Under the pieces are notes generated by a model. It was not told where the DNA came from. It worked only from the letters and a program-made list of their open reading frames with translations, and ran no database searches. A stretch of 64,000 bases of DNA, from assembly GCF_003918875.1 (NCBI RefSeq), contig NW_025765814.1, positions 1,488,001 through 1,552,000 on the forward strand, read 5' to 3'. Shown one piece after another: positions 17,531 to 62,439 of the stretch (position 1 is the stretch's first letter; every line of letters starts with the position of its first letter). Origin of the DNA: Haliotis rubra. Taxonomy: Eukaryota. The translations under genes and the position numbers were made by a program.

Positions 17531-18673
17531 GACCCGTGAAGATCGAGGTTATATTGGTCTTCAGTAACCATTTAACAATTGTCGTAAGAGGCAACTAACG
17601 GGATCGGGTGGTCGGGCTCGCGGACTTGGTTGACACGTGTCATCGTATCCCAGTTGCGTAGATCGATGCTCATGATGTTGATCACCGGATTGTCTGGTCC
17701 AGACTCGATTATTTACAGACCGCCACAATATAGCTGGAATATTGCTGAGCGCGGCGCAAAACTAAACTCACTCACTCACTCACTTTACAAAACGTGATGC
17801 AAATAGATACTTGTAGAGGCGGCCGTAATACACCCGTGAAGATCTGGGTTAGAATTGATCTTCAGTAACCCATGCTTGTCGTAAGAGGCGACTAACGGGA
17901 TCGGGTGGTCAGCTTCGCTGACTTGGTTGACACATGTCACCGGTTCCCAGTTGCGCAGGTCGATGCTCATGCTGTTGATCACTGGAGTGTCTGGTCCAGA
18001 CTCGATTATTTACAGACCGCCACCATATAGCTGGAATATTGCTGAGTGCGGCGTAAAACTAAACTCACTCACTCACTCACTTTACAAAACGTGATGCAAA
18101 TAGATACTTGTAGAGGCGGCCGTAATACACCCGTGAAGATCTGGGTTAGAATTGATCTTCAGTAACCCATGCTTGTCGTAAGAGGCGACTAACGGGATCG
18201 GGTGGTCAGCTTCGCTGAGTTGGTTGACACATGTCACCGGTTCCCAGTTGCGCAGGTCGATGCTCATGCTGTTGATCACTGGAGTGTCTGGTCCAGACTC
18301 GATTATTTACAGACCGCCACCATATAGCTGGAATATTGCTGAGTGCGGCGTAAAACTAAACTCACTCACTCACTCACTTTACAAAACGTGATGCAAATAG
18401 ATACTTGTAGAGGCGGCCGTAATACACCCGTGAAGATCTGGGTTAGAATTGATCTTCAGTAACCCATGCTTGTCGTAAGAGGCGACTAACGGGATCGGGT
18501 GGTCAGCTTCGCTGACTTGGTTGACACATGTCACCGGTTCCCAGTTGCGCAGGTCGATGCTCATGCTGTTGATCACTGGAGTGTCTGGTCCAGACTCGAT
18601 TATTTACAGACCGCCACCATATAGTTGGAATATTGCCGAGTGCGGCGTTAAACAGCAAATCAACTAAACCAAG
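17531..18673 (+). mobile_element. F1 SINE tandem array (four SINE bodies, 297-bp period) inside one target-site duplication
   Basis: TSD TCCTCCGCGTG at 17520-17530 and 18674-18684; near-identical units at 297-bp spacing (track ORFs at 17785, 18082, 18379). Confidence 0.9.
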
Positions 18674-31027: not shown

Positions 31028-32390
31028 ATTCAACATGCATCCATTTCATTCAACATGCATTTATCTCATTCAACATGCATTTATCACATTCAACATGCAT
31101 TTATGCCATTCAACATGCATTTATATCATTCAACATGCATTTATGCTATTGAACATGCATTTATATCACTCAACAAGCATTTTATGCAACAACATGCATT
31201 TATATGCCATTCAACATGCATTTGCATTTATGCATCTATATAATTCAACATGCATTTATGCATTTATATTTGCATTATGCCATTCAACATGCATTTATAT
31301 CATTCAACATGCGATTTATATCATTCAACATGCATTTATGCCACTCAACATGCATTTACATCATTCAACATGCATTTATGCCATTCAACATGCATTTATA
31401 TCACTGAACGAGCATTTATATCATTCAACATGCATCTATATAATTCGACATGCATGTTGAATGGCATAAATGCAATTCAACATGCATTTATATCATTCAA
31501 CATGCATTTATATAATTCAACATGCATTTATATCATTCAACACGCATTTATATCATTCAACATGCATTTATGCCACTCAACATGCATTTATATCATTCAA
31601 CATGCATTTATATCATCAACATGCATTTATATCATTCAACATGCATTTATGCCATTCAACATGCATTTATGCCATTCAACATGCATTTATATCACTCAAC
31701 AAGCATTTATATCATTCAACATGCATCTATATATACATTCGACATGCATTTATACTATTCAATGACATCTATGCATTCAATGCATTTATGACTTTTATGC
31801 ATTTATATCATTCAACATGCATCTATATCAACATCAACATTCAATGCATTTTATGCCATTCAACACGCATTTATATCATTCAACATGCATTATGCCACTC
31901 AACATGCATATATATTATTCAACATGCATTTATGCCATTCAACATGCATATATATATCATTCAACATGCATTTATATCATTCAACATGCATTTATGCCAT
32001 TCAACATGCATATATATTATTATTCAACATGCATTTATATAATTGCAACATGCATTTATGCCATTCAACATGCATATATATATCATTCAACATGCATTTA
32101 TATCATTCAACATGCATTTATGCCATTCAACATACATTTATATCATTCAACATGCATTTATCCATTCAACATGCATTCAACATGCATGTTATGCCATCAA
32201 CATGGCATACGGCATGCATTCATCATCTATATTCAGCATGCATTTATCCAGCATTCAGCATGCGTTTATCCCATTCAACATGCATTTACCATGCATTTAT
32301 CCCATTCAACATGCATTTACCAGATTCAACATGCATTTATCCCATTCAGCATGCGTTTATCCCATTCAACATGCATTTATCCCATTCAGA
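31028..32390. repeat. 20-bp minisatellite (CATTCAACATGCATTTAT[AT/GC]), roughly 65 units
   Basis: Read directly; accounts for all H/S/T/C/I/Y-repeat ORFs in the track. Confidence 0.95.
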
Positions 32391-38883: not shown

Positions 38884-39593
38884 CTGGTCATATGTGTTTA
38901 CCACATGTATGGGGTTTAGTCCGGTGTATAAGGTGTCAAAACAAACTGTGCTTGTTGTAATGTGGTTGTTGACTTACTCGCAAAAACTGGAGTCATTAAA
39001 GTTTTTCAGAGACCCATTCTTTCACCACCATTTTGTCATGGTCGGCAAATGATTCGACAGATTATTCTCTGGCGTTGACGCCTGACATATATACTTCAAG
39101 CCTGTGTGTAAAATAGGTACTATTAACAAAAGGTTTTTATTTGAAAGAATTAAATAACAAACAGTTAACGAAAATACTATGTTCTTACGTGAGTAACTAT
39201 CAGATGAATAGCTTCAGTCGGACTTCAGAGTGTTTCTCTAATCAAGTGTAACGGTCGCTTGACTCCTAAGTCGGTATAACTCCTAATCTTTAACACTGAC
39301 TTCCGACATCCGTGGCGTTAAAATCGCTTTGTGGAACCAGGAGGTCACATGGATCAGATTACATCATAACCAGACATTTTTCTACAACAGAAAAATACAG
39401 TCCTAAATACCCAGAAAATATGAAAAATGCTCAATGCCGGGAGCTTCCTTACGTGCACAATTCTAAAGACACCACTTAAAATAGCTCTTCAATGAACAGG
39501 AAGGGATGGATGTGCGTGTCTGTTGTGTGGGGGTTAGGGGTCGGGTTAGAGAACTGATCGAAATACGACAAGGAAGATCGAAGTTTCCGTTCC

Positions 39594-42500
39594 TCAGCAG
39601 CTCACACCAAACGTATACGATGTCGTCTGCCGGTATGTCTCCCCCGGACGTAGAACGGTGTTGGGAAAACTTGGCTGAAACAGATGGAGACGTGGTGGAG
39701 CTGCTGTATGTTGTGTTAATATAGAGTAACAACTTCTCTGTGACCGTTGTTGGTAGGCTGTCAGTTAACGGTAACCAAGTTAGAGTTAACTTATTCACCT
39801 CGCCTTGATCATTGTTCAACAGACTGATTGAAACCGTCACTCACTCATTCACCTTAAAACTTGCCCCTTAAACAGTGCTCCTTTTGTTGTCAGTGTAGTG
39901 CTGACAAACCATTTAAATACTCTGGGGGGAGTGCTGACCCTTCTGATTGATGCTGTCAGGGTAGTGCTGACCCACATGATTGATGCTGTCAGTGTAGTGC
40001 TGACCCACCTGATTGATGCTGTCAGGGTAGTGCTGACCCACCTGATTGATGCTGTCAGGGTAGTGCTGACTGTCCAGTGTAGTGCACCTGATTGATGCTG
40101 TCAGGGTAGTGCTGACCCACCTGATTGATGCTGTCAGGGTAGTGCTGACCCACCTGATTGATGCTGTCAGGGTAGTGCTGACCCACCTGATTGATGCTGT
40201 CAGTGTAGTGCTGACCCACCTGATTGATGCTGTCAGGGTAGTGCTGACCCACCTGATTGATGCTGTCAGGGGGTAGTGCTGACCCACCTGATTGATGCTG
40301 TCAGGATAGTGCTGACCCACCTGATTGATGCCCACCTGATGTCAGGGTAGTGCTGACCCACCTGATTGATGCTGTCAGGGTAGTGCTGACCCACCTGATT
40401 GATGCTGTCAGGGTAGTGCTGACCCACCTGATTGATGCTTGTCAGGGTAGTGCTGGACCCACCTGATTGATGCTGTCAGGATAGTGCTGACCCACCTGAT
40501 TGATGCTGTCCAGGATAGTGCTGACCCACCTGACTGATGCTGTCAGGTAGTGCTGACCCACCTGATTGATGCTGTCAGGGTGTGCTGACCCACCTGATTG
40601 ATGCTGTCAGGGTAGTGCTGACCCACCTGATTGATGCTGTCAGGGTAGTGCTGACCCACCTGATTGATGCTGTCAGGGTAGTGCTGACCCACCTGATTGA
40701 TGCTGTCAGGGTAGTGCTGACCCACCTGATTGATGCTGTCAGGGTAGTGCTGACCCACCTGATTGATGCTGTCAGGGTAGTGCTGACCCACCTGATTGAT
40801 GCTGTCAGGGTAGTGCTGACCCACCTGATTGATGCTGTCAGAGTAGTGCTGACCCACCTGATTGATGCTGTCAGGGTAGTGCTGACCCACCTGATTGATG
40901 CTGTCAGGGTAGTGCTGACCCACCTGATTGATGCTGTCAGGTAGTGCTGACCCACCTGATTGATGCTGTCAGGGTAGTGCTGACCCACCTGATTGATGCT
41001 GTCAGGGTAGTGCTGACCCACCTGATTGATGCTGTCAGGGTAGTGCTGACCCACCTGATTGATGCTGTCAGGGTAGTGCTGACCCACCTGATTGATGCTG
41101 TCAGGGTAGTGCTGACCCACCTGATTGATGCTGTCAGGGTAGTGCTGACCCACCTGATTGATGCTGTCAGGGTAGTGCTGACCCACCTGATTGATGCTGT
41201 CAGGGTAGTGCTGACCCACCTGATTGATGCTGTCAGGGTAGTGCTGACCCACCTGATTGATGCTGTCAGGGTAGTGCTGACCCACCTGATTGATGCTGTC
41301 AGGGTAGTGCTGACCCACCTGATTGATGCTGTCAGGGTAGTGCTGACTCACCTGATTGATGCTGTCAGGGTAGTGCTGACCCACCTGATTGATGCTGTCA
41401 GGGTAGTGCTGACCCACCTGATTGATGCTGTCAGGGTAGTGCTGACCCACCTGATTGATGCTGTCAGGGTAGTACTGACCCACCTGATTGATGCTGTCAG
41501 GGTAGTGCTGACCCACCTGATTGATGCTGTCAGGGTAGTGCTGAGCCTCCAGACAGAATCCTCCATACTGGGAGTAGTTGGCACCTCCCTTTCCTGCCAT
41601 GTCCTGCAGATAGAAGCTGGTGTAGAACTGCACCCCTGGCTCTGTGGTGTGGCACTCCATCCACCTCCCACTCGGCGGGTGCTCCACTCTGTTGGCACAA
41701 CGCATCATGTATGTTGGCATAGGACCTTAAGAAAACTCTTAAGTGCATTTCAGATGACACACGTCGTGTTATTCTGACTTGTTATACTCAAACGCTGGCC
41801 AGTTTTACTTGAGAGGCCATAAATGCTTTTGCAAGATGACGCCCATGAAAGAAATGCTTCATAGCGACGGAAAGTTTATCATATCCTAGTGAAACTGACA
41901 CTGTTGTTATCCCGTGACCGGATTTACCCGCTGGAAAGATTTGTATCATTTTCACACTTCCCACCTTGCTGCTAGACGCCTTTCTCCAGACAGGGACAGA
42001 TTGAAGTTGTGGTCGAACCCCTTCCCACCGGGCACCTGCCCAAGCCGGTCTCCAAGACGTACGGGGGACCTCAGGTCCCATTCCGTTCCCCCCACTTTCC
42101 GGATCTCACCTGGAACAGACAAAACGCCCAATGACGTCATCACCATGGGATTCATGGTTGCAGTCGGTGCCTGTCACGTATGGTCATCGTAGGATGAGAC
42201 TATATGGAACTGATTGGTTTGATCATTGTTCAAAATATCAATGACGTAATTGTCCAGATGTGATTTAGTTACAGGCTCGCTGCGTGCGACGTTAAACAAC
42301 AACTGACAGTCGTCATGGTGATGTCAGTATGTACCACAGGCAGCACGAACCTTACCTGTTGGAATCGCGTAGTCATCCACAGGTAAGAAAGATTCTGCAT
42401 TGAGTTGAACAACATGGTCATGAACCTTCCCAGAGCCCTGAGAACATAAATATGCAACATGACTGTCACACATCCCCTTTGGAGAAAGGGTGTAATGTAT

Positions 42501-45500
42501 GATTGAAGGGGGGGATCTGAAAATAATCCATACAGTGTAAGCATGTGTTACTGTGCTGACCTTGTATGTGTTCAGATGAAACTACCATGTGTATATTGCG
42601 GTCATTTAACTTAGGATAATAAATATACAGGACTCTATTTTTTTGTTACATTAGCACTATAGATATTGATATTGTGTCGTATTGTGTTATTTGTATTGTG
42701 TCTTTCTAAACTTGTGAAGTAAACATGCATGCTTCCATGGGGCTTGTGTTCAGATATAGTCTGACACTTTGACCGCGCTGCTAACATCCTTGACCACGGG
42801 ATTGTTTCTTATCTTTAGACTCGATAAATAATACAACACGCCAATCTCCAGAATCCTCAGATATTTTCCCCATCTCAAGTTTCCCCAGTTCGAAGTTTCC
42901 ATGGCAACTCACATGGCCTCCAAGGTTAAAGTAACCGTGGCTGCTGAAGTTGACAGGTGTTGCCTTGGTCGATGTTGCCGTGTAGTCAATGATCAGCTCA
43001 TTCTCATCAGTCAGTTCGTATGTGACTGTCAGAGTTACCTCCCCTGGGTAGTTCTCCTCACCGTCAGGACTGATGTATTTAAGGCTCAGTCTGTTTCCTT
43101 CAACCTTGGCCTCCCAGAATCTCTAGAACAGAGATGAGATTAGGGATAAGATGAGTGAGTGAGTTTAGTTTTACACCGCACTCAGCAATATTCCATCAAT
43201 ATGGCGGCGGGATAAGATGAATACTGGGCGTACGAATTACCTGACGTTTAAAGTCAGCTCAGTTATCAGACTGTTTGAGGAAACTTAAGTGACTCAGATT
43301 GTTTGTCAGTCATATTTAACTCTGCAAAATAGTTCATGCTATTTGATAGCGTTCTGTAAACAGTCGTGAGTTAGTGAGTTTAGTTTTACGCCGCACTCAG
43401 CAATATTCCAGCTATATGGCGGCGGTCTGTACTATAATCGAGTCTGGACCAGACAAGCGAGTGACCAACAGCATGGGCATCGATCTACAATTGATATAAG
43501 ATGACATGTGCCAATTAAGTCAGCGAGCCTGACCACCAGATCCCGTTGTCGCCTCTTACGACAAGCATGGGTTGCTTGGACCAATAGTTTTTGGACATGG
43601 TCCGTCATAGTTGGCATCATAATCCAGACAGCACCGACCTTCCCGAATCCTCTTGTTCCTCCATGCAGACTGTTGGGTCCATCGTTGACAACCAGAGAGT
43701 AGGAAGTGCCATCGAGACTGAACTGTCCACCAGCGATCCTGTTAGCCACCCGACCGATCAGAGCACCAACGTACCCGCTCTTAGCATAGCCTCACATCAT
43801 GAAAAAATATACAATAGATAAAATATGTTTTGTATACAGCTTCACCCTATGTGTGAGGGGCATTTTGTTTAATATGGATTGGATTCTCAGCCATTAACTG
43901 AAGCAAAAGTCTTGATATATACATGTCTTGCCCACCTTCCATGTCATCAAAGCCGAGGCTTATGTCCTCCATCTTGCCGTCCCTGTCGGGGACGATGATG
44001 TCAGTGATGATGCCGCCATAGTCCAGGACTCTCACGATGGCGTTGTTCTTGTTCTTGAAGGTGTATCTGCAATAAAGAAACATGTCATGATTTTGTTGTT
44101 CTTGGTCTGGAAGGTTTATCTGAAACGAGGAAAACACATTCTTGGTCTGTGACGTGTATCTGAAACTTTGGCACGTGTACAATCTCCATGGTAACATGCA
44201 TGATCCGGCAGGCCAAGCGCTAGGATACCAGTTGCAACCGTTTACATTTACGTTACCAATTTACAAAATCACAACTTTCAGTGTGCCAGGAGATGCATCG
44301 CGTTTGGATATATCCTGTGAATATCAAAATAATTGACAACAAAATGTGTTTAACACTTGTACATTTTCCTTTAGGGCATTACATATTGTAACAAAATGGA
44401 AGCACAAACACGTCCAATATTATCTAGCAAAGCTGTGGCCCCTTGCCTAATGCAAGTAGGATGTGGTGGTAAGGGTTCGCTTCAATTCCCAAATGAGTAC
44501 ATTTTGTGAATATCTCAGATTGGAAGATTAATTTATACCGAGACAATCACTTCAACATTAAAAACATATATGTATAATAATGTTGCCTGTATATGTCGAT
44601 ATTTAACATGTAATTTGTCTCGTTCCAGAGAATGCATATGCAGAACCTGACCAATAGGTAAGGAATATCAAGGTAGAATGGTTTAGACACGCTGTAAAGT
44701 GTCATTCAGTTGATATATCATTCAAGCGATGGGGCTATATCGGATCATGTGTTATTGGCACTCTCTATATAAGAGAAATAAAAGAATTAAACGCCATTTC
44801 CATGATCATAAGGCATGTCTTTTCACAGCTGTGTAGACTATATGATTCTGACTATATCATGAGCATGTGTTTATGAGTGAGTGAGTGAGTTTTTGGTTTT
44901 ACGCCGCTTTTAGCAATATTCCAGAAATATCACGGCGGGGGACACCAGAAATGGGCTTTACACATTGTACCCATGTGGGGAATCGAACCCGGGTCTTCGG
45001 CGTGACGAGCCGACGCTTTAACCACTAGGCTACCCCACCGCCCCGCATGTGTCTATGAATTGCTATAAAAAATTGAAGGTGACTGTCCTGTCAAAAAACA
45101 CGCTAATGATGATCATTTGGTAACAGTGAGTGACTCGGCCGACATTTGCCGACGGCAGCCACCGATGTTCAGTCTAACACAGACATGCTCGACAATTTCC
45201 GAGTCATCGGTATAAAGCTGGGTCCCGATCCACAAAGCGTTCGTAGCGCTACGACATTCGTAAGCCTATGATAAACTATAGAGTTACGACAGTTCGTAAC
45301 GTTACGAACGCTTTGTGGATCGGGCCCCTGGACTAGTTCTGATTGCGGCACAAAACAACAGTCAGTTATTTTACACGACAATACAGGTAACTCGATACAA
45401 GTTTGACTGTCGTAGGGATCTGTTCTACAAATAGATGCTACAATGACTGTTGTAAGGCTAGGTTTATGCAAAGCTATTACAGTCGTCTTAAAAACTGGTT

Positions 45501-47235: not shown

Positions 47236-50200
47236 TCAGGTGCTGACTCCAAACGTATACGATGTCGTCTGCCGGTATATCTCCCCGGGACGTAGTACGG
47301 TGTTGGGGAAACTTGGCTGAAACATGTAGAGTAAAATCTTAAAAAGCGGGCAGCTGTGGAATACATATGAACAAGAGCCAAGATAAGTATTGATGAAAAA
47401 CATCCTTTTGGAAATGGTTTGTTTGTACAACACCATTACGTGTTTTCTTTACGTGTTTTTCATTTACGTGTTTTTCTTTATTGTTTTTTTTCTGTATGAC
47501 CTGAAGTCAGACGAGGCTATATTTTAAATCTGCTTTTGTTTTCATCATTAAGAATCAGTTGGACAACGATGTCGGAGAACAGTTTGGAGACAGAGGAATC
47601 TTTGTGCATTAAGATTTTTTGTTTTACTTTTGTATACAAGTGATTTGTGCATATTTGCCGCATTACAAAGAAAGATAGAAGCTTTTATTAATTTTTGCCT
47701 TAAAAGTCATAGATTAGACTGATATTTTAGTTTTCAGAAACGGTAGAAAACTGAGAAAAAATAAGAACTTGAAGCTTGGTGACGTGTCTTGTTAAGTGTC
47801 CTCATATTCTAGTTATCTCGGTATATTGATTTCCAATAGATTCTGTTGTCTCAAAGCTAATAAGGCTACCATACCAGCCACCATAATATTACTCCTATAG
47901 TCTTGTTTAGAATATTTGATTTTCAGTGCTGACCCACCTGATTGACGCTGTCAGGGTAGTGCTGACCCACCTGATTGATGCTGTCAGGATAGTGCTGACC
48001 CACCTGATTGATGCTGTCAGGGTAGTGCTGACCCACCTGATTGACGCTGTCAGGGTAGTGCTGACCCACCTGATTGACACTGTCGAGGGTAGTGGTCAGG
48101 GTAGTGCTGACCCACCTGATTGATGCTGTCAGGGTAGTGCTGACCCACCTGATTGATGCTGTCAGGGTAGTGCTGACCCACCTGATTGATGCTGTCAGGA
48201 TAGTGCTGACCCACCTGATTGATGCTGTCACGGTAGTGTCGACCCAACTGATTGACGCTGTCAGGGTAGTGCTGACTCACCTGATTGATGCTGTCAGGGT
48301 AGTGCTGACCCACCTGATTGATGCTGTCAGAGTAGTGCTGACCCACCTGATTGATGCTGTCAGGGTAGTGCTGACCCACCTGATTGATGGTGTCACGGTA
48401 GTGTCGACCCAACTGATTGACGTTGTCAGGGTAGTGCTGACTCACCTGATTGATGCTGTCAGGGTAGTGCTGACCCACCTGATTGATGCTGTCAGGGTAG
48501 TGCTGAGCCTCCAGACAGAATCCTCCAAACTGGGAGTAGTTGGCACCACCTTTCCCTGTCAGGTCTTTAATGAAGAACCCGGTGTAGAACTGCACCCCTG
48601 GCTCGGTGGTGTGGCACTCCATCCACCTCCCACTCGGCGGGTGCTCCACTCTGCAATCAGTTTATGTAGCAAAATACAAGTCTCGTTTTAACAACTACAG
48701 CAGACCTGTCATACGGAACACCAATCTTTTCGAATAAACCAATTCGTTCGAGACAAACAGAGTGCGGGTATTAAGTCTTAAACGAAGACATCACAGTATT
48801 CGTCTCCGGAAATATCAGAATATATTTCTAACAAAACCATGAGATACAAGCCTCTGCTTGGATGTCTGGTTTCTCCGATTCTTTGAAAGGTAGATTAGGA
48901 AGGGTGGCTTCTCTGCCGTACAAATACGGACAGGCAAACGGTTTATCATTATTGTTGGGGGTGATGAATGGTTGTTACGACAGCAGTTGAAGAAGCCTGA
49001 CAAGCTTATCTATTTACGCATCACTATATCATAGTTGATACCATCACCATATTGAAACATCCCGTTAACCTACGTAAACTACGTTCATACCGAACACGCT
49101 TGTAACGAACCGACGGATATAACGAACTGTTTCTTTCGCTACGGCCACTAGCTTCATATTTTACTCGAAGCGGTTGTACCGAACTGCTGTTATAATGAAC
49201 TAAAATTATTGGTCCCTTTAAGTTCGTTTTCACCGTATGTTACCGTATTAATCCATTGTGAAATATTGGCATCATGTCCAACGTCCCAACCTTGCTGCTA
49301 AGCGCCTTTCTCCAGACACAGACAGATTGAAGTTGTGGTCGAACCCCTTCCCACCGGGCACCTGCCTAAGCCGGTCCCCAAGACGTACAGGGGACCTCAG
49401 GTCCCATTCCGTTCCCTCCACTTTCCGGATCTCACCTGGAACAGTCCAGACACTTCAGTATGATGAGGTAATAACAGGTAGAATTTCAAAAAATTGCCTG
49501 TATATCTTCACCACACGTCGTTAACCAGTAGTTACTGATTTACCTGTGGGAATCGCGTTGTCATCCACAGGTAGGAAAGACTCTGAATTGAGTTGTACAA
49601 CGTGATCATCAACCTTCCCTGAGCCCTGGCAAAAGACAACAAACAACATGATTTAATCGCGTCACGAACAGCTTGAGTGCATGTTAGTGTGATAGTTGAT
49701 TTAAAACCTAATGTTTGATGACATTCTAGAAGTAAGTGAGATTATTGCATACAGCGAGGTTTCGGTGTAGATTGTTACACCGTTTTCAAGCTTAAAACCG
49801 GTGTAAGACTCCCTTGACCCCATCGGTTCCTGTAGTTATTCATTGGTGCATGGTCATTACATAGTCAAATACCGTTGTGCCGAAGTTGTGTCGAGACCTA
49901 TATGTAATTACTTCGAGTTATCCGAAGTTCGACACAAACGCAAAATAATGACTAAGGAAGGAATAAGCAGTGACCACGCAGGCTTTTGCCTCGAGATTAC
50001 CGTAAATTCGACACAACGGTGTTTGTACCAATCAATTCACAAACATATCATTTTGACATCTGGCTTGTCCTGAAAGTTTAATGAAACGTGGCAACTCACA
50101 TGGCCTCCCAGGTTGAAGTAAGCATGATTGGTGAAGTTGACAGGTGTTGCCTTGGTCGATGTTGCCGTGTAGTCAATGATCAGCTCATTCTCATCAGTCA

Positions 50201-53183
50201 GTTCGTATGTGACTGTCAGAGTTACCTCCCCTGGGTAGTTCTCCTCACCGTCAGGACTGGTGTATTTAAGGCTCAGTCTGTTTCCGTCAACCTTGGCCTC
50301 CCAGAATCTCTAGACATGTTGCAATATCGAATTAAATATATAGGACACGGCATAAGTCTTTGCATAAAACCACACTCTTCAGAACTGATTTCAAAGATTA
50401 TGGCAGGGAAGCTTTTTCTGTCGTTTTGTGGGGACAATCTATAGTGATATTTATCATATTTGTTGAACACCTGACATTTTCCTCTACCTGTAATTAAGAA
50501 ACATGACGAGTGTTTTCCCACAGCTTCGACACAATCAACAGACCCAGACGTATTTCCTTCATCACAATACCAATTGAGAGATGGCTTTGACAAGGGATGC
50601 TATCAGGTGCATCGTTGTGAAGCCAAACACAGTTGGAGACTTAAACCCACCTTGTCAAATCCTCTCTTTCCTCCATGCAAACTGTTGGGTCCGTTGTTGA
50701 CAAACAGGGAGTAGGAAGTGCCATCAAGACTGAACTGTCCACCAGCGATCCTGTTAGCCACCCGACCGATCAGAGCACCCATGAATCTGCCCCCGGCATA
50801 GCCTTGTGACGTGGAGGAAATTATGAACAGAAGATGATCTCAAATCATTACAGGTCGTCGGTGGTTGTTTTCATTGTCTATAAGTATATTGTACAAGGGA
50901 AAATATACTGTCACTGTAATTGTTTGAGAATAAAGTTATCGAGAATCACGTATGTTGCTATTCGTCCTCACCTTCCATGTCATCAAAGCCGAGGTTGACG
51001 TCCTCCATCTTGCCGTCCCTGTCGGGGACGATGATGTCAGTGATGATGCCGCCATAGTCCAGGACTCTCACGGTGACGTTGTTTTTGTTCTGGAAGGTGT
51101 ATCTGCAATAAGGAAACGTGCTACTATGATGTTGTTCTTGGTCTGGAAGGTTTATTTGAAACGAGGAAAACACCTTACGGTGACGCTGTCCTTGGTCAGT
51201 GTCGTGTTCTTAAATAGTGGAACTTTGGCTATAAAAGGCCAGAACACGTATTCAAACTGCATGATCTGACAGAACAAACGCAATAATGTCAACTGTACAC
51301 GTCTAAGACGGTACAGCTTTGCTAGTTACAGAAGCACATGTCATGAAAGTTGGCTAGTGTCGCATGTTCCTGGTGTTTGCTGTGCAGTTGCACATTCCGG
51401 TAGTCTGTGCAATCTGCTGGGTAGTGCGGCATTTGTCACTGCGCACCAAGAACACCCATTAGGTTAGATTGGTATACTATGGAAAACTGATAGCAACAAC
51501 ATTGTGTAACTGGGTAATATTGTCAGTTCATCTAAATTATTTAAATAACCGAACCTGGTCGACACACTCGTGGGTGATATCATGAGGAACATTATTCATT
51601 CGAGTGGGCTCGAACGGGTTCTGGGATCTATTGACCTTAGTATGCTTACAGGGCTGACCAGAAGGAATACTGATGTTAGTGAGTTTAGTTTTACGCCGCA
51701 CTCAGCAATATTCCAGCTATATGGCGGCGGTCTGTAAATAATCGAGTCTGGACCAGACAATCCAGTGATCAACAGCATGAGCATCGATCGCATCGCAATT
51801 GGGAACCGATGGCATGTGTCAACCAAGTCAGCGAGCCTGACCACCGTTAGTCGCCTCTTACGACAAGTATGGGTTACTGAAGGCCAATATTCTAACGCGG
51901 ACCTTCACGGGTCAATCCTGATGTTAATGAGTGTGAGTGAGTTCAGTTTTTACGCCGCTTTTACCATTATTTCAGCAATATCACGGTGGGGGTCACCAAA
52001 AATGGGCTTTACACATTGTACCCATGAGGGGAACCGATCCCGAATTTTCGACGTGACGAGCGAACGCTTTAACCACTAGAATACCTCAACGCTCGACAAA
52101 TGTTGAAGGGCCATCAAGCATTACGGCTGCAGGAGAACGTTAGGCCTGGATTGCAACAGCTGGTAACATATATATCTTCTCCAAATCACATATCGCCTAG
52201 AGTATCAGGTGTTATGTTGGCTAGAAAGTAGGCAGATATGCATGCATTGTTACCGATCTTTTCCTGTCCTTGGTAAGCACGTAGGATGCACTCACATGTC
52301 TATATAGGTGATGACGATGAGTGAGTGAGTGTATGGTTTTACGCCGCATTTAGCAATATTCCAGCAATATCACGGCTAGGGACACCAGAAATGACGTAAT
52401 TCTTGTTCTGGAAGGTGGGGAATCGAACCCGGGTCTTCAGTATGAGCAGCGAACGCTTTAACCCCTAGGCTACCCCACCGCCCTGATGACGATGAGTGAG
52501 TGAGCGAGTTGGGTTTTACGCCGCTTTTAGCAATATTCCAGCAATATCACGGCGGGGGACACCAGGAATGGGCTTCACACGTTGTGCCCAGGTGGGGAAT
52601 CAAACCCGGGTCTTCAGTATGAGCAGCGAACGCTTTAACCCCTAGGCTACCCCACCGCCCTGATGACGATGACCATGTACATGCTAAACAACTTCAGTAA
52701 ACTACTTTTATTACGAACACTATTACGAACTAACGGATGTAACGAACTATTTTAGAAACCACCACTGGCTGTATATTTTGGTCAAAATGAATGTAACGAA
52801 ATACAGCTACAACGAGCTAAAAGTAGTGGTCCCCTTGAGTTTTCTATAACCCTAGCTTCATGTTCATTCTGTATAAACGGCTGTGTTGGCTCAAGCTCAT
52901 TCATATGCAGGGCTAGTGGTCAGTTCACTATCTGTCGTATTAGGGTCGTATACAGAGGAGCCTGTACAAATTATAACGTGACAATAGCGTCCCAGATTCT
53001 CGGTGAGCATCAGCAGAGATAACACCCTCTCTGACCCCATTAAATAACTCAAGTATATAACTGCTCACAGTAAGATGGCCATCAGTGACCATGTTGTTAC
53101 ATATGGTCAACATTAACACCATCTCACCTTGTGACTTCCTTGCCATCTGCTGTTTTACCAAATGAATCCGTCGAGATCGGCAT
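47236..53183 (-). CDS. GALM: Galactose mutarotase (aldose 1-epimerase), paralog B, 8 exons, 342 aa
   Basis: Exons 53128-53183, 50972-51102, 50651-50802, 50100-50309, 49544-49625, 49291-49435, 48479-48650, 47236-47316; same exon lengths as paralog A; TNHAYFNL and GFCLEAQ retain catalytic His and Glu. Confidence 0.93.
47925..48506 (-). repeat. 33-bp exon-end/donor minisatellite (GALM-B intron 7), about 17-18 units
   Basis: Same unit as in paralog A, with variant units ([10 protein letters not shown]) recurring at 165-bp spacing. Confidence 0.97.
52318..52660 (-). mobile_element. Tandem pair of F2 tRNA-SINEs in GALM-B intron 1
   Basis: Two copies, with TGATGACGATGA present three times (before, between, after). 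Confidence 0.85.
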
Positions 53184-53311
53184 GGCTGGTTGTGACAGAC
53201 ACCGACTGTGATACACGGTGATACAAATCAGAGGAGGTCGGGACAGTTATCTTCTCTTGTGACAGCGGGGCTCGTCTCAAAACATTTGTCGCATTTTATT
53301 ACTTTAAATGA

Positions 53312-53480
53312 CTGACTGACTGACACGGTTTGGTTTTACGCCGCTTTTAGCAATATTCCAGCAACATCACGGCGGGGGACACCAGAAATGGGCTTCACAC
53401 ATTGTGCCCATGTGGGGATTCGAACCGGGTCTTCGGCGTGACGAGCCAACGCTTTAACCATTAGGCTACCCCACCGCCCC
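53312..53480 (-). mobile_element. F2 tRNA-SINE, full length, just upstream of GALM-B
   Basis: 12-bp TSD TACTTTAAATGA at 53300-53311 and 53481-53492. Confidence 0.88.
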
Positions 53481-55207: not shown

Positions 55208-55650
55208 TTAGTGCCATAGATGGAACTGACACATTGTCCCCGTGTTTCTAGTGCCATAGATGGAACTGATACATTGTCCCCGTGTTTCTAGTGCCATAGA
55301 TGGAACTGATACATTGTCCCCGTGTTTCTAGTGCCATAGGTGGAGCTGATACATTGTCCCCGTGTTTCTAGTGCCATAGATGGAACTGATACATTGTCCC
55401 CGTGTTTCTAGTGCCATAGATGGAGCTGACACATTGTCCCCGTGTTTCTAGTGCCATAGATGGAGCTGAGCTAGACACATTGTCCCCGTGTTTCTAGTGC
55501 CATAGACATGGAGCTGATGACATTGTCCCCGTGTTTCTAGTGCCATAGGTGGAGCTGATACATTGTCCCCGTGTGCCATAGGTGGAGCTGACAATTCAGG
55601 CATTGTCTCTGTCCCCGTTATTGTGCCATATCTGAACAGTCCCCGTGTTT
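55208..55650. repeat. 40-bp minisatellite, about 10 units, decaying rightwards
   Basis: Unit TAGTGCCATAGATGGAACTGATACATTGTCCCCGTGTTTC. Confidence 0.93.
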
Positions 55651-58035: not shown

Positions 58036-60409
58036 TTAGCTGCTGATGCCAAACTTGTAAGATGTCGTCTGTCTGTAGGTTTCCCCATCACGCAAAACAC
58101 AGTTCGGGAAACTTGGCTGAAACAGAAACAAACGTAATCAGATTTTGATGAATTGTCATCACAGATTCATATGTGTTGAACACTGATATCTTGAACTGGT
58201 CTTCAGATCGGCCATCAGACAAATACATCCCCATATCGTTACTGTCTGGGTAATGCTGATCTACTTGACTGACCCACCTGATTGATGGTGTCAGGGTAGT
58301 GCTGACCCACCTGATTGATGGTGTCAGGGTAGAGCTGACCCACTTTGATTGATGCTGTCAGGGTAGTGCTGACCCACCTGATTGTTGCTGTCAGGGTAGT
58401 GCTGACCCACCTGATTGATGCTGTCAGGGTAGTACTGACCCACCTGATTGATGCTGTCAGGGTAGTGCTGACCCACCTGATTGATGCTGTCAGGATAGTG
58501 CTGACCCACCTGATTGATGGTGTCAGGGTAGTGCTGACCCACCTGATTGATGGTGTCAGGGTAGTGCTGACCCACCTGATTGTTGCTGTCAGGGTAGTGC
58601 TGACCCACCTGATTGTTGCTGTCAGGGTAGTACTGACCCACCTGATTGATTGTCTCAGGGTAGTGCTGATCCACCTGATTGATGGTGTCAGGGTAGTGCT
58701 GACCCACCTGATTGTTGCTGTCAGGGTAGTGCTGACCCACCTGATTGATGGTGTCAGGGTAGTGCTGACCCACCTGATTGTTGCTGTCAGGGTAGTGCTG
58801 ACCCACCTGATTGATGGTGTCATGGTAGTGCTGACCCACCTGATTGATGGTGTCAGGGAAGTGCTGATCCCCCAGATCGATGGTGTCAGGGTAGTGCTGA
58901 CCCACCTGATTGATGCTGTCAGGGTAGTGCTGAGCCTCCAGGCAGAATCCTCCGTACTGGGAGTAGATGGCCCCTGCTTTCCCCACCACATCCTGCAGAT
59001 AGAAGCTGGTGTAGAACTGCACCCCTGGTTCCGTGGTGTGGCACTCCATCCACCTCCCACTTGGCGGGTGCTCCACCCTGTCGGCATAAAACACTCTCAC
59101 TGACTTCATCACAGGCAGTTCAGAGATTCAAAAAGAATGCCTCGGGTACTTATGTAAGCTTTATGGAAAACTTTCCTCGTATGCTGGTGTTATACTTATA
59201 TTGGAATATGTCGTCAATCACAATTAAAAATCTTCACTCAACCTTGCTGCCAGACGCTTTTCACCAGACAGAGACAGGTTGAAGTTGTGGTCAAACCCCT
59301 TCCCACCAGGCACCTGCCCAAGTCGGTCCCCAAGACGTACAGGGGACCTCAGGTCCCATTCCGTTGCCTCCACTTTCCGGATCTCACCTGGAAAATGTGT
59401 GTAATAGGTACACATTGAGAATTATGATTCAATTAAGACAAGTTCAGAAATGCAATGAAGGATAAAAAAGCAAATTCCTGAAGTTTTGAGACTTGTTACT
59501 GTTGCCTCTCAAAACATATTTCTGAAAGTTTCTTGTAATACTTAAAAACATACTGTCATGAAGCATGATTTACACATATTAGGTACAGGTGAAATCTGTG
59601 ACAGATCAGTATCACCATTGTTCAAAGGGAGCAGCACAGGTATACAATTTCTGTAGCTAACACGAAGCCAGTTACTGTAATCAGTTGTCACAATGTCTAC
59701 AATATAGGGGCTCCTTTCACGAAGCAACCTTTACTAAGGTTAACCTTAACTCCCATTCTTTAACATTGCACTAAGGTTACCTTAGTGACTTACGAACACC
59801 TTAGTGCTTTGTGAAAGGAGGCCCTGCTACCCAATGCAGATCACATGAGAGACTTGTACCTGTAGGTATAGAGTTATCATCCAGAGGCAGGAAATGTTCT
59901 GCATTGATCTGCACACGATGATCATCGATCTTCCCTGATGCCTGGAAACAGATTTTGTAAATTCATGTAAAACACATGGATCTCTATTTGAGCAATTATT
60001 GGTCGAAACATGACAATTCAGTATCTCTTTATCTTTGTTGTCTAAAGTCACATTAAACAATATTCCTATATGAGTCTCTCATTTTCATGTTAAGTTTCCA
60101 TCTTGGATATCTAATTCAACAGTGATACTTGTCCGATTTAACATCTGTGATGCCAAGTTTGACTACAATCATCTGAAACACAAATACCAGAACTCACATG
60201 GCCTCCCAGATTGAAGTAAGCATGGTTGGTGAAGTTGACAGGTGTTGCCTTGGTCGATGTTGCCGTGTAGTCAATGATCAGCTCATTCTCATCAGTCAGT
60301 TAGGTTATGTGACTGTCAGAGTTACCTCCCCTGGGTAGTTCTCCTCACCATCTGGGCTGATGTATTTAAGGCTCAGTCTGTTTCCGTCAACCTTGGCCTC
60401 CCATAGTCG
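58036..60409 (-). pseudogene. GALM: GALM paralog C, exons 4-8 only in window; +2 frameshift/stop in exon 4 (pseudogene or assembly error)
   Basis: Exons 60198-60409 (212 nt vs 210), 59860-59941, 59243-59387, 58906-59077, 58036-58116; in-frame TAA at 60305-60307; exons 1-3 not found up to 64000. Confidence 0.75.
58269..58933 (-). repeat. 33-bp exon-end/donor minisatellite (GALM-C intron 7), about 20 units
   Basis: Same unit, more diverged (DSIN/DTIN/DSNN variants). Confidence 0.96.
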
Positions 60410-60999
60410 CTATAGAGGTGAAATATAGTTCCGCTGTTATTATCACCAAAGCAGGGGTCATAATACACCAATAAGAGTGTTGGCTATTATTCTTTTGAAA
60501 AGTGAGTGAGAGAGCAACAGATTCAGTGAGTTGTGTTTAGTGTGAGTGAGTGAGTGAGTTTGGTTTTACACCACACTCAGCAATATTCCAGCTAAATGGC
60601 AGCGGTCTGTAAATAATCGAGTCTGGACCAGACAATCCAGTGATCAACAGCATGAGCATAGATCTGCGCAATTGGGAACCGATGACATGTGTCAACCAAG
60701 TCAGCAAGCCTGACCACCCGATCCCGTTAGTCGCCTCTTACGACAAGCATAGTCGCCTTATTGTGGCAAGCATGGGTTGCTGAAGACCTATTCTACACCA
60801 GATTGAGTTGTGTTTAACACAGCTTTTGACAGTATTCTTGTTATATCCCAGTCAGTGTCAGCTTGTTGTGGAAGGAGAGCCCAAAATGATGTAGGCTTCA
60901 GATGTTTACTAATCTGGCAATATGTGGTGCCGTGTGGTCCTGTGCATAGAGCTCAGGTCACAATTCAGTTGAAGTTAAGCAAAGTTGAGCGGGGAGAGT

Positions 61000-61325: not shown

Positions 61326-61763
61326 TCCACAACATGTCTATGGTGCTGACAGTCCCGGAACTATAACTGATAGCAAGGACCAAGACTTCAAATATCCAAC
61401 ATATGTAAGGTCAAATAAACATGTATCAAAGGACAAGTCCCTGGAACCCTGGGCTCAGTTCGACAAAACCATACACTGATTTATCAAAAGTTGACACACT
61501 CTTTAGCGATTCCTATTGCTGACATAATGAAGCTTAAACATATATAGAATTAGTTTTCAGGCAATGGCCTTTGACAATGATAGAAAATGGGCAGGCACCA
61601 TCTTTTTTTGCAACCTTTGAAAGGACCTACCTAAAATATTCCTTCATAAGTACAATACAATACTTTATCCCTTTATCCAATTTAAAGCAGCTTGTGGTGG
61701 TTACCATGGTAACTCTTCAGGCAGGACCCCCAAACTTTCATACAGTTGTATTCACAGAACTCA

Positions 61764-61963
61764 TACTATCAAAAGGAACTCAACCTGATAGTACACTTTA
61801 TACAATCAAAAGGAACTCAACCTGATAGTACACTGTAACGGTACTATCAAAAGGAACTCAACCTGATAGTACACTGTATACTATCAAAAGGAACTCAACC
61901 TGATAGTACACTGTATACTATCAAAAGGAACTCAACCTGATAGTACACTGTATACTATCAAAA
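61764..61963. repeat. 37-bp minisatellite, about 5 units, each with internal 8-bp inverted repeat
   Basis: Unit TACTATCAAAAGGAACTCAACCTGATAGTACACTGTA (TACTATCA/TGATAGTA). Confidence 0.9.
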
Positions 61964-62439
61964 GCACAAACAATATGTTTAAGCATTGAAGCTAGTTAGC
62001 CTACTGTGTGTGTATACATAACAGATACACATGTTTTTATAGTTTATGGACACCTTTGCTAAATTAACAAACAGATACAACAGTTTACAGGGTATTCTAC
62101 GCTATCTCCAGTCTTTGACTACTATTTGACCGCCAGTGTGCTTTTCTTCGAGTGGGTTTCACAACATGAAGTTGTTCTCTTAAGCACATAAAACCAGAAA
62201 TACTCAACAAATCCGAACTGCAGTATACACATTTGTGTTTTATTTTCCTATCTGGCAGTTAAGTGTTCATTGTATATCTGGACTTACACTAATAATGCAT
62301 TACAATAATTTAATTCAAGATGTTACTCAGTTTTCGCTACATTAATTTTGATGAAATCGTATATTGGAAGATCAGTAAATTGTACCATTGCACCAACTTT
62401 CGTTGAAATGACTATTAGTTAAAATGACTATTAGATATA

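What the first reader, a model, noticed from the sequence alone, without database searches (positions are those of the whole stretch)
39931..41688. Splice-donor ladder: exon 7 end plus 5' splice site amplified as an in-frame 33-bp array in all three GALM paralogs
Seen: the unit is exactly the last 27 nt of exon 7 (QHYPDSINQ) plus GTGGGT, so each intact unit is a phase-0 donor CAG|GTGGGT. Splicing from unit n to exon 8 would insert n x [11 protein letters not shown]. Arrays occur at the same junction in A (~49 units), B (47925-48506, ~18) and C (58269-58933, ~20), even though the rest of intron 7 has diverged. The frame stays open for about 17 units in A and C and about 12 in B. Knowledge: the repeated peptide begins two residues after the catalytic Glu of the GFCLE motif; donor-spanning VNTRs are known in isolated human genes such as CBS. 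Inference: either a length-tunable isoform generator or splicing rheostat conserved across a gene family, or a mutational process that amplifies exon-intron junctions.
Basis: partly seen in the sequence, partly recalled or inferred. Interest (0 to 1): 0.85.

Follow-up and report, generated by a model that had tools for sequence, protein, structure and literature searches.

The report
Splice-donor minisatellite in abalone GALM introns
Intron 7 of each abalone galactose-mutarotase gene is largely built from tandem copies of the preceding exon's last 27 bases plus its splice donor. The arrays are real and old, but this is a known kind of junction-spanning minisatellite and is most likely spliced out whole from the first donor, not used to make protein variants.

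Summary
Three tandem GALM paralogs (minus strand; Haliotis rubra by exact match to RefSeq proteins) each carry a 33-bp array. Its unit is the last 27 nt of exon 7 plus GTGGGT: about 48, 18 and 20 copies.

I found the same array at the same junction in all 13 GALM genes of four Haliotis species, with 2 to 49 units. It is absent from the homologous intron of Patella and Lottia.

Downstream units show no constraint:
- variants are not depleted at the donor GT or at codon positions 1 and 2;
- 14% of units carry indels;
- one array is full of ATGGGT units.

Complex unit variants and an identical exon-7 tail are shared between paralogs, which points to gene conversion. Eleven of 13 RefSeq models join the first donor to exon 8. 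RNA contigs show the exon end running into non-array sequence at 6-9 times the depth of unit-to-unit words.

This is the architecture of the human F7, CBS, IFI6, LMNB2 and PDGFA minisatellites and the amphioxus "mirages". This scan has already noted such donor arrays on other DNA of this genome. A mutational by-product is the best reading; a selected isoform ladder has no support. In H. cracherodii gene A the first donor is mutated, which offers a natural test.

The parts
41517..41688 (-). Gene A (GALM paralog) exon 7. Its last 27 nt (41517-41543) are unit 1 of the array. The authentic donor CAG|GTGGGT cuts after 41517.
   Evidence: tblastn and splice-site reading. The intron-6 joint 41688->41965 is seen in an RNA run. 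Exact match to RefSeq protein P0124.
39926..41544 (-). Array A: about 48 units of 33 bp (27 nt of exon end plus GTGGGT). Units 1-18 are in frame. The distal third is degenerate, with indels.
   Evidence: TRF; unit parsing.
39675..39925 (-). Non-repeat remainder of intron 7 of gene A (251 nt), ending in the acceptor tttcag.
   Evidence: No similarity to the same part of B or C.
39594..39674 (-). Gene A exon 8 ([26 protein letters not shown], then stop).
39364..39381 (-). Alternative terminal coding exon (KNVWL, then stop) of RefSeq isoform X2 of gene A. It is joined to the exon-7 donor and skips exon 8.
48479..48650 (-). Gene B exon 7.
   Evidence: Matches P0132.
47925..48506 (-). Array B: about 17 units with a higher-order repeat (66/165 bp). 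Units 2 and 7 carry GTGAGT; units 3 and 8 carry TTGGGT.
47236..47316 (-). Gene B exon 8.
58906..59077 (-). Gene C exon 7.
58269..58933 (-). Array C: 20 units. Unit 2 has lost its donor (CTG|GGGGAT).
58036..58116 (-). Gene C exon 8.
44032..44166 (-). A second junction duplication in gene A: the intron-1 end plus exon-2 start is repeated 2-3 times with a 53-nt period. The same is seen in gene B at 51067-51197.
   Evidence: the repeat finder; offset blastn hits.

Best explanation
This is a junction-spanning ('mirage'-type) minisatellite.

Origin (inferred). A 33-bp tandem duplication across the exon 7 / intron 7 boundary arose in an ancestral Haliotis GALM gene. This happened after the split from patellogastropods and before, or spreading during, the gene triplication.

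Turnover. The arrays have since expanded and contracted by slippage and unequal exchange. They are homogenised within each array and, by gene conversion, between paralogs. The exon copy (unit 1) cannot be lost, because it encodes the conserved QHYPDSINQ next to the catalytic Glu and carries the working donor. It therefore anchors and reseeds the array. That keeps the unit consensus almost identical across paralogs and species without any selection on the downstream units.

Splicing (inferred). The most upstream donor is chosen, as shown experimentally for the human F7 array with its identical gtgggt intron hexamer. The whole array is removed as intron. The downstream donors are silent, or nearly silent, pseudo-sites.

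Shown here: the anatomy, the conservation, the turnover, the lack of constraint, and the exchange between paralogs.
Inferred: first-donor choice and the origin scenario.
For: Anatomy and reality of the arrays.

Distribution. The array is present in all 13 GALM genes of four species with very different copy numbers:
- gene A: 47-49 (rubra), 36 (cracherodii), 26 (rufescens), 2 (asinina);
- gene B: 16-18, 12, 30, 5;
- gene C: 20, 46, 16, 16-18;
- the duplicate C' in rubra: about 15.
Patella and Lottia have the same intron position without any repeat.

No constraint on 224 downstream units:
- distinct variant types per site are 4.8, 5.6 and 3.8 at codon positions 1, 2 and 3;
- 5.5 at the donor GT and 6.25 at +3 to +6;
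- 32 units carry indels;
- ATGGGT units dominate part of the H. cracherodii C array.
Higher-order repeats occur in rubra B and rufescens C.

Exchange between paralogs:
- complex variants are shared by the A and C arrays of H. cracherodii;
- the last 81 nt of exon 7 are identical in A and C of cracherodii and rufescens;
- dS between rubra A and B (0.22) is lower than between-species paralog dS (0.39-0.49), and is 0 in the last 16 codons of exon 7.

Splicing:
- 11 of 13 RefSeq models read INQ|PSFPN;
- no ladder proteins were found;
- in an RNA run, the unitig that covers the exon-7 end (depth 70.9) runs 5 nt into non-array sequence; unit-to-unit words have depth 8-12 and deep-array 29-nt variant units depth 3. 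This fits about 1% pre-mRNA multiplied by copy number.

Precedent: F7, LMNB2 and PDGFA use only the authentic donor, and stronger downstream pseudo-sites do not compete (PMC1557585). Amphioxus mirages do not disturb splicing (PMC3087553).

Other donor arrays are noted in this genome.
Against: - The array has never been lost in any of 13 genes, despite dS up to about 0.4-0.5 between the lineages. A pure birth-death process should sometimes end at one unit; H. asinina A is down to two.
- The unit consensus differs by only 0-3 of 33 nt between species whose introns are 70-82% identical. The donor hexamer GTGGGT is invariant in 12 of 13 genes, while the other donors of these genes vary between paralogs. 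This fits anchoring plus conversion, but selection is not excluded.
- Array words are present in the RNA run.
- Human IFI6 and CBS do use the two nearest pseudo-sites.
- All RNA evidence here comes from contigs and from Gnomon models, not from counted junction reads.
Confidence: 0.72

Rival explanations
1. Selected isoform ladder or rheostat. Several of the identical phase-0 donors are used. This gives GALM isoforms with 1 to about 17 extra [11 protein letters not shown] units next to the active site, and array length tunes the mixture.
For: - The unit is 33 nt, has no stop codon in the exon frame, and is in frame for 12-18 units.
- In the model of P0002 the insertion point lies in a lower-confidence stretch between the catalytic strand and the last strand (pLDDT about 66-68 there, 93 overall), so short insertions might be tolerated.
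- IFI6 and CBS use two pseudo-sites.
- Array words are present in an RNA run.
Against: - No depletion of variants at GT or at codon positions 1 and 2 in 224 downstream units; 14% of units have indels.
- Copy number runs from 2 to 49 among orthologues.
- Donor 2 of rubra C is dead, and many cracherodii C units are ATGGGT.
- No RefSeq isoform has +11n residues. The one read-through model, P0130, belongs to a damaged copy.
- Nothing was found in two searches of 5.8 billion proteins.
- In-frame perfect units are the automatic result of recent amplification of a 33-nt unit.
Confidence: 0.07
2. The array works at the RNA level. One version: it is a row of U1-binding sites that strengthens definition of exon 7, protects the intron, or slows splicing. 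Another version: it is a reserve of spare donors that buffers loss of the first one.
For: - Most units keep a good U1 match (CAG|GTGGGT, some GTGAGT).
- In H. cracherodii gene A the first donor is CAG|ATGGGT. The otherwise intact gene is modelled with a GT 21 nt further on, which keeps the frame.
- In F7 minigenes the next pseudo-site takes over when the first is destroyed.
- The array persists in 13 of 13 genes.
Against: - No constraint on the GT of downstream units.
- H. asinina gene A does with two units.
- The cracherodii rescue donor is a new GT created inside unit 2, not a reiterated one, and the reiterated donor 2 would shift the frame by 32 nt. That model is a prediction.
- No special RNA structure (z = -0.48).
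- Similar arrays sit in many unrelated genes of this genome, which speaks for mutation rather than gene-specific regulation.
Confidence: 0.12
3. Assembly artefact: the arrays are collapsed or inflated repeats of a long-read assembly and do not exist as such.
For: - The H. rubra scaffold carries indel-type damage nearby: a 2-nt insertion in exon 4 of C and a disrupted exon 8 in C'.
- The exact copy numbers, and the 32/34/35-nt units in array A, could therefore be partly consensus errors.
Against: - The same arrays stand at the same junction in four independent assemblies, with orthologous array ends, for example the shared last unit of cracherodii B and rufescens B.
- Array word depth in a DNA run is 418-671, against 13 for single-copy sequence.
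Confidence: 0.01

Closest known systems
Human F7 intron-7 37-bp minisatellite (Borensztajn et al. 2006, PMC1557585)
   Same: - The first monomer spans the exon 7 / intron 7 boundary, so the authentic donor is followed by identical pseudo-donors.
- The intronic hexamer is the same, gtgggt (F7: TGG/gtgggt; here CAG/gtgggt).
- The array is polymorphic in length.
- In F7 only the most upstream donor is used, and the next one takes over when it is mutated. That second point parallels the situation expected in H. cracherodii gene A.
   Different: - F7 has 5-9 copies of a 37-bp unit (4 exonic plus 33 intronic nt), out of frame, in one gene of one lineage.
- Here there are up to about 49 copies of a 33-bp in-frame unit (27 exonic plus 6 intronic nt), in 3-4 paralogs of four species.
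- Donor choice was not measured here.
Human IFI6 (6-16) and CBS intron-13 junction minisatellites (as summarised in PMC1557585)
   Same: A donor-spanning array with many pseudo-sites: 25 in the 6-16 gene, and 15-20 repeats in CBS.
   Different: [quoted passage not shown] No such transcripts or proteins were seen here, though low levels are not excluded.
Human LMNB2 (100-bp unit) and PDGF (81-bp unit) junction minisatellites (PMC1557585)
   Same: A junction-spanning array of 10-18 units in which only the authentic donor is used. This is the behaviour I infer here.
   Different: Their units are much longer, and paralog-wide conservation is not reported for them.
Amphioxus 'mirage' minisatellites (Adh3 and globin genes; PMC3087553)
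   Same: - Tandem repeats spanning exon-intron boundaries, at both 5' and 3' junctions.
- Length instability and concerted evolution within clusters.
- Regular splicing is not disturbed.
- They recur in several genes of one genome. Here a donor array and an exon-2 acceptor duplication sit in the same gene.
   Different: A different phylum. Persistence across paralogs and species and exchange between paralog arrays are shown here; I did not see them described in the passages I read.
Other donor-seeded arrays noted by this scan in the same H. rubra genome (s1-341740 sulfatases, s1-333071 LRRK2-like, and six more)
   Same: The same architecture, exon end plus donor amplified into the following intron. 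In the sulfatases it is also present in all paralogs.
   Different: Different genes and unit lengths (a 41-nt unit is noted, so not all are multiples of 3). I did not inspect those sequences.

Membership tests
Junction-spanning minisatellite (F7 / CBS / IFI6 type; amphioxus 'mirage') | A tandem array whose first monomer spans an exon-intron boundary. | tested here: met
   Unit 1 is the last 27 nt of exon 7 plus GTGGGT in A, B and C, and in 10 further genes of four species.
Junction-spanning minisatellite (F7 / CBS / IFI6 type; amphioxus 'mirage') | The exact splice-donor sequence is reiterated in the intron. | tested here: met
   CAG|GTGGGT stands in 44 of 47 parsed units of A, in most units of B and C, and in the consensus of all arrays with at least 10 usable units.
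Junction-spanning minisatellite (F7 / CBS / IFI6 type; amphioxus 'mirage') | Length instability (variable copy number) and concerted evolution within the cluster. | tested here: met
   2 to 49 units among orthologues; 20 versus about 15 between the 95.7%-identical copies C and C'; higher-order repeats; array-specific variants. Polymorphism within a population was not tested.
Junction-spanning minisatellite (F7 / CBS / IFI6 type; amphioxus 'mirage') | Regular splicing from the authentic, most upstream donor, with the pseudo-sites silent or nearly so. | tested here: inconclusive
   11 of 13 RefSeq models use donor 1, and RNA contigs favour it.
Aldose 1-epimerase / galactose mutarotase (Pfam PF01263) | Full-length similarity to solved mutarotases, with conserved catalytic residues. 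| tested here: met
   P0124 (gene A) against human GALM 1SNZ: E 1.3e-101 over residues 18-355. PF01263 is listed for all hits. H105, H175 and E306 are invariant and D243 nearly invariant in 61 sequences. The model has pLDDT 93.
Alternative 5' splice-site ladder that makes in-frame protein isoforms (IFI6-like use) | Transcripts or proteins that differ by whole repeat units. | tested here: not met
   No protein covers more than the exon part of an exon-7-plus-array query among 5.8 billion proteins at two length ranges. No RefSeq isoform has +11n residues. The absence is from assemblies and predictions, so rare forms could be missed.

The most novel reading that the evidence does not exclude
Abalone genomes harbour a lineage-specific mutational process that preferentially amplifies 5' splice-site junctions, perhaps tied to the GGTGGG-type donor motif that is also found in the human F7 array.

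Under this reading the resulting donor arrays:
- persist for the whole Haliotis radiation;
- act as conversion hotspots that keep paralog exon ends identical;
- occasionally supply replacement donors, as in H. cracherodii gene A, so that they shift exon ends and shape gene structure.
Probability: 0.3. Interest if true: 0.6.

Novelty: new member of a known kind. Interest (0 to 1): 0.4.

Why it matters
This locus gives 13 natural alleles of one experiment: identical 5' splice sites in tandem, from 2 to 49 copies, some with stronger (GTGAGT) or dead (ATGGGT, TTGGGT) internal sites, and one gene whose first donor is destroyed.

That makes it a ready-made, non-mammalian test of the 'most upstream donor wins' rule established on human F7 minigenes.

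It also shows that a junction minisatellite can outlive speciation and gene duplication, because its first unit is a selected exon end. It shows as well that such arrays travel between paralogs by conversion.

Together with the other donor arrays noted in this genome, it suggests that mirage-type repeats are a general feature of abalone gene structure. They can mislead gene prediction: two of the 13 RefSeq models here are distorted by the array.

Tried and rejected
I followed the tool's own advice and laid the part with about 10 units. Exon 8 was then outside the stretch, so donor-to-exon-8 joints could not be seen.
2. The look-up of sequencing runs offered no run on record as RNA and no raw-read run. 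X2 and X3 held only array words and no exon, probably low-coverage DNA, and were uninformative.
3. Two protein searches for ladder isoforms were blank: the 383-aa exon-7-plus-array ORF and a 112-aa version. The collection also holds no Haliotis transcript-derived fragments, so this blank is weak.
4. RNA structure that might mask the downstream donors: 163 nt fold no better than shuffles (z = -0.48). The small CCUGA/UCAGG hairpin is present at every donor, the first included.
5. A gradient of unit divergence away from the exon, as simple reseeding from unit 1 predicts, is clear only in rubra A and weakly in cracherodii B. Reseeding alone is therefore not enough, and conversion between paralogs is needed as well.
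6. My first global alignment of paralog introns was too crude. blastn confirmed that similarity is limited to exons, short flanks, SINE-like repeats and the arrays.
7. The 394-aa RefSeq model that reads three units into an array (P0130) looked like support for the ladder. It belongs to a duplicate copy, C', outside the window, whose exon 8 is disrupted, so it is a rescue by the gene predictor.
Full report
**What is there.** The window carries three tandem galactose-mutarotase (GALM, aldose 1-epimerase) genes on the minus strand, in the order C (58.0-60.4 kb), B (47.2-53.2 kb), A (39.6-45.7 kb). Each has eight coding exons (tblastn and splice-site reading).
- Gene A matches RefSeq protein XP_046564968 of Haliotis rubra residue for residue at both ends. 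Gene B matches XP_046564977. The window is therefore blacklip abalone or something very close to it.
- Gene A aligns with human GALM (1SNZ) at E 1e-101, and the catalytic Glu of GFCLE is conserved.
- Exon 7 of A (41688-41517) ends with CAGCACTACCCTGACAGCATCAATCAG and is followed by GTGGGT.
- Tandem Repeats Finder reports a 33-bp array from 41544 down to 39926 (48.4 copies). It reports the same unit at 47925-48506 (about 17.6 units) and 58269-58933 (20.1 units).
- Parsing unit by unit confirms that the unit is exactly 27 exonic nt plus the first 6 intronic nt. Nearly all units keep CAG|GTGGGT. The exon frame stays open for 18, 12 and 17 units in A, B and C.
- Exon 8 lies 251, 608 and 152 nt beyond the arrays. 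Those remainders share no similarity.

**How old and how widespread.**
- I fetched the orthologous loci of H. cracherodii, H. rufescens and H. asinina, and a further H. rubra copy (C', about 80 kb upstream of the window, 95.7% identical to C).
- All 13 genes have the array at the same junction. Unit numbers are A 47-49 / 36 / 26 / 2, B 16-18 / 12 / 30 / 5, C 20 / 46 / 16 / 16-18, and C' about 15.
- A protein tree puts the Haliotis paralogs in one clade apart from Patella and Lottia, with type A a supported group that contains all four species.
- Patella caerulea and Lottia gigantea have the intron at the same position, but it is 583 and about 180 nt long with no repeat.
- Orthologous introns of rubra and asinina are still alignable, with blastn hits at 66-91% identity, and dS is 0.22-0.27. 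Paralog introns are not alignable at all.
- The array is therefore at least as old as the radiation of these four species, and probably as old as the triplication.

**Is it constrained?** The consensus unit is the same, or differs at 1-3 of 33 positions, in every array. That is far less than the neutral divergence around it. Within the arrays, however, I find no sign of selection.
- In 224 downstream units, distinct variants per site are 4.8, 5.6 and 3.8 at codon positions 1, 2 and 3. They are 5.5 at the donor GT and 6.25 at +3 to +6.
- 32 units carry indels.
- In the C array of H. cracherodii, many of the first 27 units read CAG|ATGGGT. In rubra C the second unit has no donor. In rubra B units 3 and 8 read TTGGGT.
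- Higher-order periodicities (rubra B, rufescens C) are those of unequal exchange.

Conservation of the consensus is better explained in two ways.
- First, unit 1 is the selected exon end and donor and cannot be deleted. In a birth-death process of units it is the only immortal lineage.
- Second, paralog arrays exchange sequence. Complex variants (three substitutions; a deletion plus a substitution) are shared by the A and C arrays of H. cracherodii.
- The last 81 nt of exon 7 are identical in types A and C of cracherodii and rufescens, but not in rubra or asinina.
- dS between rubra A and B (0.22) is lower than between-species paralog dS (0.39-0.49). It falls to zero in the last 16 codons of exon 7.

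**Which donor is used?** This I could test only indirectly.
- Eleven of the 13 RefSeq models read ...INQ|PSFPN..., which can only come from donor 1.
- One exception, P0130, reads three units into the array. It belongs to copy C', whose exon 8 is disrupted.
- The other exception, P0002 (H. cracherodii A), is discussed below.
- Searching the 5.8-billion-protein collection with exon 7 plus 30 units, and with exon 7 plus 5 units, found no protein that extends into the repeat.
- The run search offered only contig-level runs.
- Run X1 is RNA of a rufescens- or cracherodii-like abalone. Intron 6 is cut out (joint 41688 to 41965, GT..AG on the gene strand) and has zero depth. The exon letters are those of that lineage.
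- In X1 the unitig that covers the exon-7 end has depth 70.9 and runs five letters into something that is not the array. Unit-to-unit words have depth 8-12. Contigs with the 29-nt variant unit, which lies deep in the arrays of those species, have depth about 3.
- About 1% unspliced RNA, multiplied by dozens of copies, explains this. Average use of downstream donors up to roughly a tenth of transcripts cannot be excluded.
- A DNA run gives 418-671 for array words against 13 for single-copy intron, so the arrays are real.
- RNA folding shows no structure that would hide the later donors (z = -0.48).

**A natural knock-out.** In H. cracherodii gene A the authentic donor reads CAG|ATGGGT.
- Unit 2 has a 1-nt deletion, so the reiterated donor 2 would add 32 nt and shift the frame.
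- The RefSeq model instead uses a GT created by a C-to-T change inside unit 2 (ACA|GTATCA). This adds seven residues (MGQHYPT) and keeps the frame.
- A structure model of that protein (pLDDT 93) places the insertion in a lower-confidence stretch (pLDDT about 66-68) between the catalytic strand and the last strand.
- Whether that splice is real needs RNA from that species.

**Comparison with what is known.** Borensztajn et al. (PMC1557585) describe the same architecture in human F7: a 37-bp unit, 5-9 copies, donor TGG/gtgggt.
- They show that only the most upstream donor is used.
- The next functional pseudo-site takes over when the first is destroyed.
- Stronger downstream sites do not compete.
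- They list IFI6 (6-16) and CBS, where the two nearest pseudo-sites are also used, and LMNB2 and PDGF, where only the authentic one is used.
- Ebner et al. (PMC3087553) describe 'mirages' in amphioxus. These are tandem repeats that span exon-intron boundaries at either end of an exon. They are unstable, evolve in concert, and do not disturb splicing.

Genes A and B here also carry a 53-nt duplication of the exon-2 acceptor junction, which is a second mirage in the same gene.

This scan has already noted donor-seeded arrays on other DNA of this genome: five sulfatase paralogs, an LRRK2-like gene, TEX11, PGRP4, METTL27, a P450 and others. I did not check those. As leads they favour a genome-wide mutational tendency, and one of them has a 41-nt unit, so multiples of three are not the rule.

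**Verdict.** The locus is a new, unusually large and unusually long-lived member of a known kind. Its value is as a natural series for testing 5' splice-site choice, and as an example of how a selected exon end and gene conversion can keep an intronic minisatellite 'conserved'.

Noticed in passing
window 58036-60409; L004, L005: Gene C in the window has a 2-nt insertion in exon 4 (212 versus 210 nt, so the frame is split), and exons 1-3 are not found up to 64000. RefSeq joins its exons to a first exon about 70 kb upstream, across caspase genes (P0127). A 95.7%-identical copy C' outside the window has exons 1-7, its own array and a disrupted exon 8 (P0130). These could be pseudogenes, a segmental duplication or indel errors of the assembly.
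   Followed up: partly
window 44032-44166 and 51067-51197: The exon-2 acceptor junction (end of intron 1 plus start of exon 2) is repeated 2-3 times with a 53-nt period in genes A and B. This is a second, older junction duplication in the same genes.
   Followed up: yes
L006 9075-9140 (H. cracherodii gene A): The authentic exon-7 donor is CAG|ATGGGT. The RefSeq model uses a new GT 21 nt downstream inside unit 2, which adds MGQHYPT.
   Followed up: partly
window exons of A and B (e.g. 43934-44065, 42913-43122, 41517-41564): Synonymous divergence between paralogs A and B is very uneven: dS is 0.08-0.15 in exons 2, 4 and 6, 0.3-0.5 in exons 1, 3, 5 and 8, and 0 in the last 16 codons of exon 7. 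The introns are unalignable. This suggests short exon-limited conversion tracts.
   Followed up: partly
window 44868-45044, 43366-43576, 43150-43211; 51675-53480; 60532-60750: SINE-like repeats, with a translated motif such as ...[19 protein letters not shown]..., lie scattered in the introns and spacers of all three genes, with four copies upstream of gene B.
   Followed up: no
window 31028-32388; 55209-55574; 61763-61964; 17532-18653: Other tandem arrays: 20 bp x 67, 40 bp x 8.9, 37 bp x 5.4 and 297 bp x 3.8. I did not examine whether any derives from a splice junction.
   Followed up: no
P0135, P0136 (ENA, unknown mollusc): Gene calls that read through the same exon end (...QHYPDSVHQ then VGQVG...) show that a GTGGG-type donor, followed by a near-copy of itself, also exists in another, unidentified relative.
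   Followed up: no
runs X2 and X3 on window 41220-41549: These two runs, guessed to be RNA, hold array-like words (including a variant unit with ...GGTTAATG...) at depths up to about 90-140, but none of unique exon 7. They are probably low-coverage DNA of related species in which only multi-copy sequence was assembled.
   Followed up: no
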